DNA of 64,000 bases from Asterias rubens. Its lineage: Eukaryota. Under the pieces are notes generated by a model. The model saw only the letters and a program-made list of their open reading frames with translations. It was not told the DNA's origin and did no database searches. The stretch spans positions 1,054,001-1,118,000 of the forward strand of contig NC_047076.1 in assembly GCF_902459465.1 (NCBI RefSeq). Reading direction: 5' to 3'. The translations under genes and the position numbers were made by a program. Shown here piece after piece: positions 31,501 to 64,000 of this stretch. Numbering within the stretch: position 1 is the first letter of the stretch; each line of letters begins with the position of its first letter.

Positions 31501-34500
31501 ATTTTTCCTTTTAGACTGTGATGTTTACCGCTACCATGCCGACAGCTGTGGAGCGTGTAGCTCGTTCCTACCTCCGACGTCCAGCCATCGTTTACATCGG
31601 CTCTATCGGCAAACCAGTCGACAAAGTGCAACAAATCGCTTACTTGGTTTCTAATCAAGAGAAGAGGTAAGTTGGATTCTTGAAACGATATCCAAAGAAG
31701 CTTTTTCAACTATCCCTTCTGCTCTTGTAACCAGGGAGTTTACCAACCCTTTATTAAAATTATTTAAGGAACACGTTGCCTTGGATCAGTCGAGTTGGTC
31801 TTTGAAAAATGTTTGTAACCGTTTGATATAAAATGCATATGGGTGGAAAGATGTTTTAGAAGTATAATACAACGATCCACACACATTTGCGAACTAACAA
31901 TAATATCTCACCATATGCATTTTATAACAAACTGTTACAAACGTATTTCAAAGACCAACTCGACCGATCCAAGGCAACGTGTTCCTTTAACAGCCCAGGT
32001 TTTGTACAGGGTTCTCATGCATTTTCACATTCATTAAATCTCATCCCTGTTTTCTAGTCTATAATTCAAGGATCAGGTAATTGATTGTTCCAACACATTA
32101 GCATAAAATGCTTTTATTTTGTTTTGTTTGTCCACAAGTTTTGTTGTGGTATATGTGCCTTTTTATGTTCATTCCTGTACCATAAGTTCATATCTACAAT
32201 GTGGAAATTGCAATTTTTTTAATTACAGACTTTGCATATTAGCTTTTTTTTCTTGCCGTAACCACTGTGCAATTCAGCCTCTGTGCTGGTGTTAATAAAC
32301 TGATAGTATACACATAATGAATGTTTATGAGTGCAATGGTGCGAATATGTTCATGAGTTGAAAGATGGAATGCTCTATTCAACGAGGCGGAGCCGAGTTG
32401 AATGGAACATTCCAGCTTTCAACGAATGAACATATTCGCACCATTGCACAAATGAAAAACATTCATTATTTGTTTTATATAACATCCAAGTAGATCTTTG
32501 TCATTTTGATTGAAAGATACAACTTTCAAAACAAACAATTTCAACTGTAGAAGCCGAATGCTAGTAATTTTACTATGCCTTCTTGCAGTAACACCTGCTG
32601 CGTTACCAAAGACACGCGCACGCAGTGATGTTTTTACTCAGCTTTTTCGTTCCATCCGGAAAGTACCATTGCACGCTGCCAGCGTGCAATGGTACTTTTC
32701 GGATGGAACGAAAAAGCACGGTGAGTGACTCGGCGTGCAATGGTACTTTTATTTGCTATCACGTGACGGACAATCCTCCAATCAAATGGCAAGGATCTGC
32801 TTGGGTGTTATATAATAACATCTATTTAATAATGAACTTCAACAATGTGACAATTTGTTACTCTTACACTGATGTGTGTATTAAAGCACTTTAGACTCAG
32901 TACTTCCCTGAGTTCTGTGAAAAGAATCACAGACATATTACTTCGGAGGGATTCGAACCCAAGGCCTAACATCTATTAAATGAATGTCTTTTGTTTTTCT
33001 TTCTTTGTAGGCATCGCTTGGTCCAGATTCTGGAGAAGGGTTACGATCCTCCGATCATGATCTTTGTCAACCAGAAGAAGGGATGTGATGTCCTTGCTAA
33101 ATCACTGGAAAAAATGGGTGTAAGTTATTTTCATTCGGGTTACAATTGAAAATACTCACAAGGGCCCAATTTCATGGCTCTGCAATAACCTTAATCATGG
33201 TGCAGCCATCTTGAATTTCTCCCATGGATATCAATGTTACCAAACTTGGGCTGGAAGAACAAAATAGTCTGGTTCCTATTTGCGAAACAATTGTTATCAT
33301 TAATGATTGTTATTCGATACGAGGAACATGACAAAGATGGAGGCAACATGATAAAGGTTTATACCGCAGACTTATGTGCTTAGTATCACCGTTCTCCGCT
33401 TACTGTGCATGTGCATGCGCTGAATTTTTGCGCTAGCTGTGTATAAAGTGAAGAGTGGCTAGTGATGTGGCAAAAACTCCCTGCAAACCCATGAAATGCG
33501 CTTGAAGTGAGTCCGGAATTTCCTGCTTCTCATTCACAATTTCGCCTTTACAAAGGCCTTTAAGGGATTGTATACGTTTGGCAATTGGAACCCACTGTTT
33601 GTTTCAATTCTATTTAGTTGTCTATTTTTGTCATTTCCGTACATTATATTGATTGACTGTTTCTATGGTTACCTGCAGTATAACGCCATCACCCTCCACG
33701 GAGGCAAGAGTCAGGAGCAGAGAGAGTACGCCCTCGCAAGTCTCAAAACAGGCGTCAAAGACATCCTGGTTGCTACCAATGTTGCCGGGCGTGGTATCGA
33801 CATCCGAGATGTGTCCGTTGTTATCAACTTTGACATGGCCAAGAGTATTGAAGGTAAGCAACTCAAATTGATGTAGGATTTTGTTTTGGTGGAAGTGCAT
33901 TTGTTTCATTATGAAAGTTGTTGTTTGTAATTTTAAAGTGTTTCCTTTTTACCTTTTTATCATGAATTTTGCTAAAGTAAAGTAACGAGAAAGTTTTTGA
34001 GAAAGAAGCAATTTCTTACTAAATTATTTGAATGATTTTTGGGGTTGAACAAAGAATTGACTGAGTCAAATACTTGAATCTGAGAAAGACTTCCTGTTGG
34101 AAGCCATTCTCAGGCGTCTGCATGCACACCAATTTGTGCAACAAGGTTGTTTTTTCTTTCGATGACCAATTGAGCTCAAATTTCACAGTTTGTTATTTTA
34201 TGCATGTTGGGATACACTAAGTGAGAATACTAGTTTTTGACAATTATTAATGAAACTTCTTCTCTCGTCTATTTCCTCAGATTATACTCATCGCATCGGT
34301 CGTACTGGCCGTGCCGGTAAAACAGGAACAGCTATAACTTTCCTGACCCAAGACGACAGCGAGGTCTTCTACGATCTCAAGCAGATTCTTCAAGGAAGTC
34401 CGATCTCAACATGTCCACCGGAGCTCGCCAATCATCCAGAAGCCCAGAATAAACCCGGTACCGTCATGAACAGGAAGAAAAGGCAGGAGGAAACCATCTT

Positions 34501-34510
34501 TGCTAACTAA
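22565..34510 (+). CDS. DDX23: DEAD-box RNA helicase DDX23 / PRP28 (U5 snRNP 100 kDa), 781 aa, 15 exons
   Basis: Exons 22565-22623, 23421-23615, 23906-24029, 24666-24801, 25358-25476, 25878-25990, 27588-27728, 28069-28297, 28958-29103, 30005-30272, 30778-30927, 31515-31666, 33011-33119, 33679-33853 and 34281-34510 sum to 2346 nt with consistent phases. RD/RS-rich N-terminus, [36 protein letters not shown] and C-terminal EETIFA. Confidence 0.97.
26082..26190. mobile_element. PIF/Harbinger-like MITE
   Basis: TIRs GGGGTGCGTTTTGGCGGTC / GACCGCCAAAATGCACCCC. Confidence 0.65.
26890..27433 (+). mobile_element. 5'-truncated CR1/L2-clade LINE (ORF2 C-terminus, 3' UTR and microsatellite tail)
   Basis: [28 protein letters not shown]...FKTLL, stop at 27185, followed by a (CTAAA)n-like tail. 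Confidence 0.8.
28395..28770. mobile_element. MITE family B copy
   Basis: TTAAAGCCATT...CCGAAAGTGTCCAATGGCTTTAA; colinear with 1230-1603. Confidence 0.85.
29190..29400 (+). mobile_element. L2-like LINE 3' remnant adjoining the assembly gap
   Basis: [18 protein letters not shown] is the typical L2 ORF2 C-terminal motif. Confidence 0.65.
29403..29539. other. Assembly gap (137 N) in DDX23 intron 9
   Basis: Run of N. The flanking DDX23 exons are in compatible phase, so no coding exon appears to be missing. Confidence 0.99.
29725..29866. mobile_element. MITE with ~50-bp TIRs, each containing a CTCF-like word
   Basis: GGAGACTTTC...AGAGGGCAGCAGACTTACCGGGTAAAT versus ATTTACCCGGTATGTCTGCTGCCACCTAG...GAAAGTCTCC. 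Confidence 0.7.
31764..31990. mobile_element. MITE family C, uninterrupted copy
   Basis: TTAAGGAACACGTTGCCTTGGATC / GATCCAAGGCAACGTGTTCCTTTAA. Confidence 0.85.
32317..32815. mobile_element. Multi-hairpin non-autonomous element (Crypton-like, tentative)
   Basis: Palindrome 32317-32466 centred on GGCGGAGCC, 16-bp inverted repeats at 32475-32490 and 32800-32815, and a near-perfect palindrome at 32641-32717. Confidence 0.6.
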
Positions 34511-63974: not shown

Positions 63975-64000
63975 CTGTCAAAAAGGAAAAAAAAAGAGAA

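What the first reader, a model, noticed from the sequence alone, without database searches (positions are those of the whole stretch)
34203..64000. ~23-kb tandem duplication that copies the helicase-RBR gene whole and breaks both neighbours' fragments
Seen: unit 1 runs from DDX23 intron 14 to MLH1 intron 4, and unit 2 restarts at ~57656. The extra DDX23 exon has lost motif VI (G>S) and the MLH1 piece has two frameshifts, while all visible ligase exons stay intact in both units. Inference: the helicase-E3 gene is the retained target of the duplication, a birth-and-death pattern typical of immune genes. Prediction: the rest of copy 2 and an intact MLH1 (exon 1 near position ~77 kb), or further units, follow the window.
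Basis: partly seen in the sequence, partly recalled or inferred. Interest (0 to 1): 0.7.

Follow-up and report, generated by a model that had tools for sequence, protein, structure and literature searches.

The report
Duplicated helicase-ligase gene in a starfish
A sea-star chromosome carries a real, fairly old 23-kb tandem duplication that produced two working copies of a giant RNA-helicase/ubiquitin-ligase gene and left dead stubs of the two neighbouring housekeeping genes. This is ordinary gene duplication, and nothing found here points to an immune role.

Summary
Window 34204-57544 (unit 1) and 57652 to extended coordinate 80236 (unit 2, 16 kb past the window) are colinear head-to-tail copies joined by about 107 bp of unique filler. 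There are two units only. Each carries the last exon of DDX23, a complete 7-exon DEAH11/12-type helicase-RBR gene (2733 and 2645 aa) and the 5' end of MLH1.

One correction: the right breakpoint is at the very end of MLH1 intron 5, not intron 4. Exon 5 was later deleted from unit 1.

The G>S change in the extra DDX23 exon and the two MLH1 frameshifts (+2 bp in exon 3, -5 bp at the exon 4 donor) are real.

Divergence (about 5% over an 8-kb tract, 11-22% in other non-coding DNA), different repeat insertions and the truncated ends exclude uncollapsed haplotypes.

Both helicase copies are intact (dN/dS 0.41). Copy 2 is seen spliced in transcript-like contigs. Words specific to both copies occur in independent runs and in a related taxon. 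Acanthaster has a single copy in the same synteny.

The divergence pattern indicates gene conversion. The immune "birth-and-death" reading is unsupported, since the genome holds only two copies and no immune evidence turned up. This is an ordinary lineage-specific duplication.

The parts
34204..57544 (.). Duplication unit 1 (23.3 kb): DDX23 last exon, helicase-RBR copy 1, MLH1 exons 1-4 plus intron 5 remnant
   Evidence: Colinear BLAST chain and global alignment against unit 2
57545..57651 (.). Junction filler of about 107 bp, with no homolog in the 124 kb examined
   Evidence: The genome search found no strong match. An X1 contig covering 57284-57602 matches exactly.
57652..64000 (.). Duplication unit 2, first 6.3 kb. 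It continues to extended coordinate 80236 (G000:C16:1134236).
34080..34246 (.). Dispersed-repeat copy in DDX23's last intron. The left breakpoint (about 34199) lies inside it, and only its last ~46 bp recur at 57655-57700.
   Evidence: matches at 10535-10615, 41082-41168, 100162-100249 and elsewhere
34280..34510 (+). Functional last coding exon of DDX23 (PRP28 ortholog), carrying motif VI
   Evidence: Aligns to human DDX23 residues 747-820, E=6e-33. An mRNA-like 2.5-kb contig of X5 carries this version.
57733..57963 (+). Orphan copy of the DDX23 last exon: T>N, G>S in motif VI, and 4 synonymous changes
38637..51334 (-). Helicase-RBR copy 1 CDS, 2733 aa. Exons: 51334-46952, 46050-43298, 42321-42087, 41445-41297, 40853-40681, 40357-40077, 38864-38637.
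   Evidence: Pfam domains; tblastn and splice modelling against the Acanthaster ortholog P0001
49755..50590 (-). 117-bp (39-aa, RG/Y-rich) tandem repeat in exon 1: 7.1 units in copy 1 and 3.8 in copy 2
   Evidence: TRF; protein alignment
38637..38864 (-). Copy 1 exon 7 (RING2/Rcat). It is 80% identical in DNA to copy 2, and a 9-bp deletion turns CPVPNC into CPC at the first zinc knuckle. The catalytic Cys is kept.
61173..64000 (-). Helicase-RBR copy 2, 3' part inside the window. Exon 7 is 61173-61403, exon 6 is 62350-62630, exon 5 is 63299-63471, exon 4 is 63826-63974. Exons 3-1 lie at 64802-74086 beyond the window.
   Evidence: Exact contigs in X3 and X5 end at the exon 7 acceptor and carry 30-42 further letters there.
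54550..54659 (+). MLH1 pseudo-exon 1 (G>R in AAGEV)
54984..55074 (+). MLH1 pseudo-exon 2 (two synonymous differences only)
56048..56148 (+). MLH1 pseudo-exon 3, with a 2-bp insertion at about 56061-56062 (frameshift)
57013..57082 (+). MLH1 pseudo-exon 4, with T>M and a 5-bp deletion across the exon/donor boundary
57246..57313 (.). High-copy 68-bp inverted-repeat element at the site where about 455 bp including MLH1 exon 5 is missing from unit 1

Best explanation
This is a genuine, lineage-specific tandem segmental duplication in a sea-star genome. A segment of about 22.6 kb was copied head to tail through a non-homologous junction carrying about 107 bp of filler. The segment ran from about 80 bp upstream of the last DDX23 exon to the last bases of MLH1 intron 5.

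The intact DDX23 uses the unit 1 exon, and the intact MLH1 uses the unit 2 exons, so neither housekeeping gene was damaged. The spare DDX23 exon and the spare MLH1 exons 1-5 became relics. The MLH1 relic has since acquired two frameshifts and lost exon 5.

The gene lying wholly inside the segment was doubled. It is a member of the DEAH11/DEAH12-type 'Helicase' subfamily of RBR E3 ligases. Both paralogs have been kept under purifying selection and are present in independent datasets. Spliced transcript-like contigs are seen for copy 2, and copy 1 expression is inferred from word shares.

After the duplication, ectopic gene conversion partly homogenised the units. It affected an 8-kb tract (exon 1, intron 1, exon 2), exon 5, and apparently the dead DDX23 and MLH1 exons. 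The RING2 exon and the RG-rich repeat array diverged.

Shown: the structure, the breakpoints, the intactness of both copies, the single-copy state in Acanthaster, and the copy number. Inferred: the mechanism of origin, the gene conversion, and the expression of copy 1.
For: Structure and copy number:
- Colinear chain and two units only.
- Junction anatomy and filler.
- Neighbours identified as DDX23 and MLH1.

Helicase-RBR copies:
- Seven-exon models with conserved GT-AG sites and open frames in both copies.
- Motifs I-VI, RING1 and the Rcat catalytic Cys are present in both.
- dN/dS is 0.41, p=3e-15, and lineage-specific changes are symmetric.

Lineage specificity:
- Acanthaster planci has one copy between MLH1 and DDX23.
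- The two copies are sister to each other with 100% support.

Gene conversion:
- Intron 1 is 5.1% diverged against 12.5% for introns 2-5 (p=4e-10).
- dS is 0.05-0.09 in exons 1-2 against 0.17-0.33 in exons 3, 4, 6 and 7.
- The MLH1 pseudo-exons show 10 differences in 372 bp, against 15% divergence in their introns (p=8e-13). About 28 were expected on the dead branch alone (p=8e-5).

Sequencing runs:
- An exact contig runs from the unit 1 end into the filler.
- In two studies, exact copy 2 exon 7 + 3'UTR contigs carry 30-42 further letters at the acceptor, and intron 6 is not covered.
- The same runs hold 86-93% of copy 1-specific words.
- A third taxon holds both copy types.
Against: - No long read or contig was shown to bridge the whole junction (57602-57720 is repeat-rich).
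- No read-depth baseline outside the units was obtained.
- All runs were served as contigs, so expression rests on where contigs lie, and the RNA nature of X3 and X5 is my inference.
- With only two sequences and a saturated outgroup, gene conversion cannot be told apart from a two-step origin.
- Unusually slow evolution of intron 1 cannot be excluded either.
- Copy 1's shortened zinc knuckle (CPC), and dN/dS of 0.59 in exon 7, could mean its ligase module is decaying.
Confidence: 0.85

Rival explanations
1. Assembly artefact: two haplotypes of one locus were left uncollapsed and placed in tandem, so the organism really has a single helicase-RBR gene.
For: The assembly is of a heterozygous marine invertebrate. 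No junction-spanning long read and no depth comparison was obtained. Logan contigs merge the two DDX23 exon versions.
Against: - The units differ by 5-22% and by several repeat insertions and deletions, far beyond allelic variation.
- Unit ends are truncated genes joined by unique filler, not matching flanks.
- Under this reading the MLH1 piece would be a null allele lacking exon 5 and everything after it.
- An exact short-read contig runs from the unit 1 end into the filler.
- Both copy types occur together in many independent runs and in a related taxon.
Confidence: 0.03
2. Adaptive 'birth-and-death' expansion of an immune RNA sensor-effector. On this view the duplication was selected because a second, diverging helicase-E3 widens recognition of foreign RNA. 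The fast-evolving RING2 exon and the variable RG repeats would be arms-race signatures.
For: - Independent lineage-specific pairs occur in Antedon, Patella and Physella.
- Exon 7 has dN/dS 0.59 and the repeat region 1.34.
- Repeat number differs, 7.1 vs 3.8.
- Another vertebrate helicase-E3, ZNFX1, is immune according to the abstract of bioRxiv 10.1101/2025.10.14.682297.
Against: - Only two copies exist, with no dead family members in the genome.
- Overall dN/dS is 0.41, and the helicase core is nearly identical between the copies.
- The elevated ratios rest on few sites and do not exceed 1 significantly.
- No immune data for this subfamily turned up in the papers searched.
- The one functional plant study found (cotton DEAH12) is developmental.
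Confidence: 0.1
3. Neutral duplication on its way to loss. On this view both copies look constrained only because gene conversion keeps copying the good sequence, and copy 1, with the damaged RING2 zinc knuckle, is already losing ligase function.
For: - Copy 1 alone has the 9-bp deletion giving CPC where Acanthaster and copy 2 both have CPVPNC.
- Exon 7 is the most diverged exon.
- Conversion tracts are evident.
Against: - Copy 1 has no stop or frameshift in 8.2 kb of CDS.
- Exons 3-6 lie outside the main conversion tract and show dN/dS 0.12 at dS 0.17.
- Copy 1-specific words are abundant in transcript-like runs.
- Both copy types predate the split from organism C.
Confidence: 0.12

Closest known systems
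'Helicase' subfamily of RBR E3 ligases (Arabidopsis DEAH11/DEAH12; Marin, PLoS One 2010, PMC2904391)
   Same: The layout is the same: DEAH helicase core, HA2/OB, DEAH11-type RBD/RRM/KH domains, then a C-terminal RING1-IBR-RING2. The subfamily is described as ancient and repeatedly lost in animal lineages.
   Different: The sea-star proteins are about 1000 aa longer at the N-terminus, with extra RRM-like regions and a 39-aa RG-rich repeat array. No function is known for any animal member.
Acanthaster planci 'ATP-dependent RNA helicase DEAH12, chloroplastic-like' (P0001, 2438 aa) and its locus DF978498.1
   Same: It is the ortholog (57-62% identity, same exon order). The synteny is the same: MLH1 head-to-head, DDX23 tail-to-tail.
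   Different: It is a single copy flanked by complete neighbours. The window's genome has two copies plus neighbour fragments.
Human PMS2 / PMS2CL (partial duplication of a MutL-homolog gene with ongoing gene conversion; from my own knowledge, not tested here)
   Same: A mismatch-repair gene sits next to a partial, dead copy of some of its own exons, and those dead exons stay unexpectedly similar to the functional ones.
   Different: Here the 5' exons of MLH1 are copied, as a by-product of duplicating the neighbouring gene. Conversion is inferred from divergence only.
ZNFX1 (vertebrate RNA helicase with E3 ligase activity; bioRxiv 10.1101/2025.10.14.682297, abstract only)
   Same: An RNA helicase and a ubiquitin-ligase activity are fused in one large protein.
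   Different: ZNFX1 has an SF1 helicase and a different ligase module. It is not homologous in architecture, and its immune role cannot be transferred.

Membership tests
Helicase subfamily of RBR E3 ligases (DEAH11/12-like) | DEAH-box helicase core with motifs I, Ia, II (DEAH), III, V, VI | tested here: met
   Pfam DEAD and Helicase_C hits. GETGSGKS, TQPRR, DEAH, SAT, TNVAETS and QRAGRAGR are present in both copies.
Helicase subfamily of RBR E3 ligases (DEAH11/12-like) | HA2 and OB helicase-associated domains | tested here: met
   HA2_N 29.2 bits, HA2_C 28.4 bits and OB_NTP_bind 47 bits, all over their cut-offs
Helicase subfamily of RBR E3 ligases (DEAH11/12-like) | DEAH11-type RBD, RRM and KH domains between helicase and RBR | tested here: inconclusive
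   RBD_DEAH11 scores 30.4 bits against a cut-off of 28.4. RRM_DEAH11 (17.5) and KH_DEAH11 (20.2) fall below 27. Close homologs carry PF24471/PF24637/PF24475 in precomputed hits.
Helicase subfamily of RBR E3 ligases (DEAH11/12-like) | C-terminal RING1-IBR-RING2 with the catalytic cysteine in RING2 | tested here: met
   RING, IBR and IBR_1 hits on exons 5, 6 and 7. Exon 7 aligns to the Rcat domains of CUL9, parkin and ARIH1/2. The GC.H catalytic Cys is kept in both copies. Copy 1 has CPC where copy 2 has CPVPNC at the first zinc knuckle.
Helicase subfamily of RBR E3 ligases (DEAH11/12-like) | ATPase/unwinding and E3 ligase activity | not testable with these tools
   Needs biochemical assay
True tandem segmental duplication (as opposed to an assembly artefact) | Head-to-tail colinear units with a novel junction | tested here: met
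True tandem segmental duplication (as opposed to an assembly artefact) | Divergence and structural differences beyond allelic level | tested here: met
   5-22% divergence, repeat insertions and deletions, exon 5 deletion, different repeat numbers
True tandem segmental duplication (as opposed to an assembly artefact) | Independent reads across the junction and normal per-copy depth | tested here: inconclusive
   An exact X1 contig covers 57284-57602 and reaches into the filler. No listed piece bridges 57602-57720, and there is no flank depth baseline.
Birth-and-death immune multigene family | Many paralogs, including pseudogenised members | tested here: not met
   Exactly two copies genome-wide, both intact
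Birth-and-death immune multigene family | Positive or diversifying selection | tested here: not met
   dN/dS is 0.41 overall. It reaches 1.34 only in the repeat array (8.7 synonymous and 35 nonsynonymous changes) and 0.59 in exon 7.
Birth-and-death immune multigene family | Immune-responsive expression or immune function | not tested
   No challenge data were examined, and nothing relevant was found in the papers searched
DDX23 / PRP28 and MLH1 (identity of the neighbours) | Best match to the named proteins over the exons concerned | tested here: met
   Human DDX23 residues 461-551 (E=2e-48) and 747-820 (E=6e-33). Human MLH1 residues 153-197. mutl and Mlh1_C exon series.

The most novel reading that the evidence does not exclude
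The two paralogs are functionally diverging RNA-guided ubiquitin ligases. Their helicase cores are kept identical by gene conversion, while the catalytic RING2 exon (20% DNA divergence, altered zinc knuckle) and the RG-rich repeat array (7 vs 4 units) escape conversion and specialise. That would be a young example of module-wise sub- or neofunctionalisation in an animal helicase-E3, possibly in RNA surveillance or antiviral defence. Separately, the dead MLH1 and DDX23 exons would be kept similar by exon-limited conversion. They could then pass frameshifts back into two essential genes.
Probability: 0.12. Interest if true: 0.6.

Novelty: new member of a known kind. Interest (0 to 1): 0.3.

Why it matters
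The finding documents a clean, datable tandem duplication with both breakpoints resolved and the single-copy ancestral state preserved in another sea star. It gives a natural pair of paralogs for an animal helicase-RBR ligase whose function is unknown. It also gives a small test case for gene conversion between a mismatch-repair gene and a dead partial copy of itself. None of this is surprising to a genome biologist. Its value is mainly correct annotation: two real genes, one MLH1 and one DDX23 plus relics, so the MLH1 and DDX23 relic exons should not be called as separate genes. It also gives a starting point for functional work on the family.

Tried and rejected
- **Recombination between repeat copies as the origin.** The left breakpoint lies inside a dispersed repeat (34080-34246). 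Neither the filler nor the right end carries the rest of that repeat, so this is rejected in favour of a non-homologous junction.
- **A third or further unit.** There is none in 60 kb downstream and none genome-wide.
- **Uncollapsed haplotypes.** Rejected on divergence and structure, as set out under the rival explanations.
- **One copy being a decaying pseudogene.** Rejected by open frames, symmetric change counts and dN/dS.
- **DDX23 'intron 14' numbering.** Not verified. I had no full DDX23 protein reference for counting exons, and I only show that it is the last intron.
- **Transcription of the orphan DDX23 exon.** Contig data were ambiguous. X5 shows only the unit 1 version. X3 has contigs of both versions near 57751. 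Logan contigs merge near-identical paralogs.
- **Tool issues.** The first call to the look-up of sequencing runs did not complete and was repeated. The N run at 29403-29539 was left untouched.
- **Literature.** One search ('chloroplastic-like') returned only irrelevant plant papers.
- **Not used.** Structure prediction and complex prediction were not run, because the finding concerns genome structure.
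Full report
**Setting.** The window is G000:C16:1054001-1118000 of a 417.6-Mb, 150-contig eukaryotic assembly. The best protein match of its largest gene is Acanthaster planci at 57-62% identity. The next matches are brittle-star and crinoid proteins. The organism is therefore an echinoderm, most likely a sea star. I fetched 60 kb downstream. Below I use 'extended' coordinates, which equal window coordinates and simply continue past 64000.

**Is the duplication there?** Yes.
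- Self-BLAST gives a single colinear chain, 34204-57531 against 57657-80230.
- A global alignment of the two units shows 94-98% identity over 43.2-50.2 kb. Elsewhere identity is 73-93% where the units can be aligned.
- Many insertions and deletions of dispersed repeats separate the units.
- No third unit exists within 124 kb.
- The 918-aa helicase exon occurs exactly twice in the genome.

**Gene content.**
- On the + strand, exons up to 34510 belong to DDX23/PRP28. One exon matches human DDX23 residues 461-551 (E=2e-48). The last exon matches residues 747-820, ending at the stop codon.
- On the - strand lies a gene with DEAD, Helicase_C, HA2, OB_NTP_bind, RBD_DEAH11 and RRM domains, followed by RING, IBR and IBR exons. 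This is the DEAH11/DEAH12-type 'Helicase' subfamily of RBR E3 ligases, which Marin describes as ancient and repeatedly lost in animals (PMC2904391).
- Downstream on the + strand, a MutL exon series with Mlh1_C exons identifies MLH1 at 77439-88317.

**Gene models.** I modelled the gene in both units using the 2438-aa Acanthaster ortholog.
- Copy 1 exons: 51334-46952, 46050-43298, 42321-42087, 41445-41297, 40853-40681, 40357-40077, 38864-38637. This gives 2733 aa.
- Copy 2 exons: 74086-69974, 68696-65941, 65036-64802, 63974-63826, 63471-63299, 62630-62350, 61403-61173. This gives 2645 aa.
- All twelve introns have GT-AG ends at homologous positions, and neither CDS has a stop or frameshift.
- Helicase motifs I-VI, RING1 and the RING2 catalytic cysteine are present in both copies.

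**Breakpoints.**
- Left: homology begins at 34199-34204 / 57652-57657. This is about 80 bp before the last DDX23 exon and lies inside a dispersed repeat (34080-34246). Only the terminal ~46 bp of that repeat are present in unit 2.
- Right: the end of unit 1 (57440-57544) aligns with 80142-80236. That point is the polypyrimidine tract 7 bp before the MLH1 exon encoding VEDLFYNV (human residues 153-197).
- By size and content the MLH1 exons match human exons 1-6 (110, 91, 99, 74, 73 nt and onward). The exon after the breakpoint is therefore exon 6, and the breakpoint lies at the end of intron 5, not intron 4.
- Exon 5 ([24 protein letters not shown], about 79835-79905) is inside unit 2. It is missing from unit 1, where 526 bp are replaced by 71 bp that hold a high-copy 68-bp inverted-repeat element.
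- Between the units lie about 107 bp (57545-57651) with no match in the 124 kb. This is a non-homologous junction with filler, so I reject recombination between repeats as the origin.

**The relics.**
- The orphan DDX23 exon (57733-57963) differs from the functional one by T>N and by G>S in motif VI. It also has four synonymous changes.
- The MLH1 stub has G>R in AAGEV (exon 1) and a 2-bp insertion in exon 3. It also has T>M in exon 4 and a 5-bp deletion across the exon 4 donor.
- Tandem duplication of an internal segment leaves DDX23 (upstream exons plus the unit 1 exon) and MLH1 (unit 2 exons 1-5 plus downstream exons) intact. The sequence shows exactly this.

**Not an artefact.** Four observations are incompatible with uncollapsed haplotypes:
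- divergence of 5-22%;
- different repeat content in the two units;
- truncated unit ends joined by filler;
- an MLH1 stub lacking exon 5 and everything after it.

In Logan contigs, an exact 319-bp contig of X1 runs from the unit 1 intron 5 remnant into the filler (57284-57602). X1 may come from the assembled individual. No listed piece bridges the repeat-rich 57602-57720, and I have no depth baseline. Full read-level confirmation is therefore still missing.

**Age and lineage.**
- In Acanthaster planci the gene is single-copy. It lies between a complete MLH1 (head-to-head, 2.8 kb away) and DDX23 (tail-to-tail).
- In a 25-protein tree the two window copies are sisters (100% support; branch lengths 0.031 and 0.025), with Acanthaster next.
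- Runs labelled organism C hold sampled words specific to copy 2 (share 0.33-0.36) and to copy 1 (share 0.64-0.68).
- An organism C contig matches copy 2 exon 7 with three differing letters and four gapped positions in 271 bp, whereas copy 1 exon 7 is only 80% identical to copy 2. Both paralog types therefore predate that split.

**Selection and conversion.**
- Pairwise dN/dS is 0.41 overall (p=3e-15 against neutrality). By region it is 0.46 and 0.27 in the two large exons, 0.12 in exons 3-6 and 0.59 in exon 7.
- Polarised with Acanthaster, 38 changes fall on copy 1 and 27 on copy 2. Neither copy behaves as a pseudogene.
- Silent divergence is strongly heterogeneous. dS is 0.05 in the exon 1 core and 0.09 in exon 2. 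Intron 1 is 5.1% diverged. By contrast introns 2-5 are 12.5% diverged (p=4e-10), dS is 0.17-0.27 in exons 3, 4 and 6, and dS is 0.33 in exon 7.
- An 8-kb tract therefore looks less than half as old as the rest. The simplest explanation is gene conversion after the duplication.
- The dead exons are also too similar to their functional counterparts. The MLH1 pseudo-exons show 10 differences in 372 bp, against 15% divergence in their own introns (p=8e-13). About 28 substitutions were expected on the dead branch alone (p=8e-5). Eight of the ten are base substitutions inside the coding sequence, and six of those eight are synonymous.
- I read this as short conversion tracts from the functional exons. 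This is an inference, and recent loss of some unknown constraint is not excluded.

**Where the copies differ.**
- The 117-bp (39-aa, RG/Y-rich) repeat has 7.1 units in copy 1 and 3.8 in copy 2.
- Copy 2 has a 30-aa K/R-rich insertion near the N-terminus.
- Exon 7 (RING2/Rcat) is about 60% identical in protein. In copy 1 a 9-bp deletion shortens the first zinc knuckle from CPVPNC to CPC. CPVPNC is shared by copy 2 and Acanthaster.
- Whether copy 1 is still a ligase is an open question.

**Expression.** All runs were served as contigs, so this rests on where contigs lie.
- Runs X3 and X5 (organism B, two studies) behave like transcriptomes.
- X5 has a 2.5-kb contig whose match starts exactly at the DDX23 exon boundary and carries the unit 1 version of the exon.
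- Both runs have exact contigs covering 60973-61402 (copy 2 exon 7 plus 3'UTR). These carry 30-42 further letters exactly at the exon 7 acceptor.
- Both runs cover exon 6, but cover the unique parts of intron 6 hardly or not at all. Exact contigs extend the 3'UTR down to about 59.0 kb.
- The same runs hold 86-93% of the words of copy 1's exon 7 and 3' flank.
- Copy 2 is thus seen spliced. Expression of copy 1 is inferred.

**The interpretation.**
- 'Retained' is supported.
- 'Target of the duplication' is untestable.
- 'Immune-type birth-and-death' is not supported. The genome has two copies with no dead members. There is no significant positive selection. No paper searched attaches an immune role to this subfamily. 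The one functional plant study found concerns cotton fibre development.
- The family does show independent lineage-specific pairs in Antedon, Patella and Physella. Recurrent duplication is therefore a fair description of the family.

**Verdict.** This is a real, well-resolved, lineage-specific tandem duplication of a known kind. It carries a new pair of members of a known but functionally uncharacterised gene family. It is of modest interest.

An earlier first-stage note on the same gene (s1-150172) calls it a DEAH helicase-RBR ligase and a candidate RNA sensor. I confirm the architecture. I did not test the sensor idea.

Noticed in passing
window 5404-8377 and 12199-15545 (- strand): Two tandem cytochrome P450 genes. 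Their exon ORFs match Pfam p450 at E=1e-44 and 3e-40, and the DNA is about 76% identical between them (5437-5867 vs 12238-12668).
   Followed up: partly
window 16965-17729 and 20257-20949 (- strand): Two tandem ORFs with Fringe-like / galactosyltransferase domains, about 79% identical in DNA. This makes a third tandem gene pair in the same 64 kb.
   Followed up: partly
window 29403-29539: A run of 137 N inside the DDX23 gene, just upstream of the DEAD-domain exon at 29985.
   Followed up: no
window 57246-57313 and 58941-59010 (inverted): A 68-bp element present in very many inverted pairs about 180 bp apart across all chromosomes (MITE-like). Contig depth there is thousands of times the single-copy level.
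   Followed up: partly
window 1230-1605, 28395-28772, 42378-42750, 36766-37219: A dispersed repeat family of about 375 bp, 85-90% identical between copies. One copy is inserted in unit 1 only, in the 3' flank of helicase copy 1.
   Followed up: no
L009:5563-5940 (extended 69563-69940): A 377-bp repeat insertion in intron 1 of copy 2 only. Related copies lie at extended 110372, 114062 and 115550.
   Followed up: no
L009, about extended 73790-73880 (copy 2 exon 1): A 30-aa K/R-rich insertion (it could be a nuclear localisation signal) present in copy 2 and absent from copy 1. I did not determine which state is ancestral.
   Followed up: no
window 59012-61172 (- strand): Exact transcript-like contigs suggest a 3'UTR of at least 2.2 kb for helicase copy 2. 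It runs towards the orphan DDX23 exon.
   Followed up: partly
G000:C16:377234-397020; G000:C1:8775176-8777077; G000:C7:21105281-21108110: Three other MutL-family loci, presumably PMS1, PMS2 and MLH3 homologs. One lies on the same chromosome, 0.7 Mb upstream.
   Followed up: no
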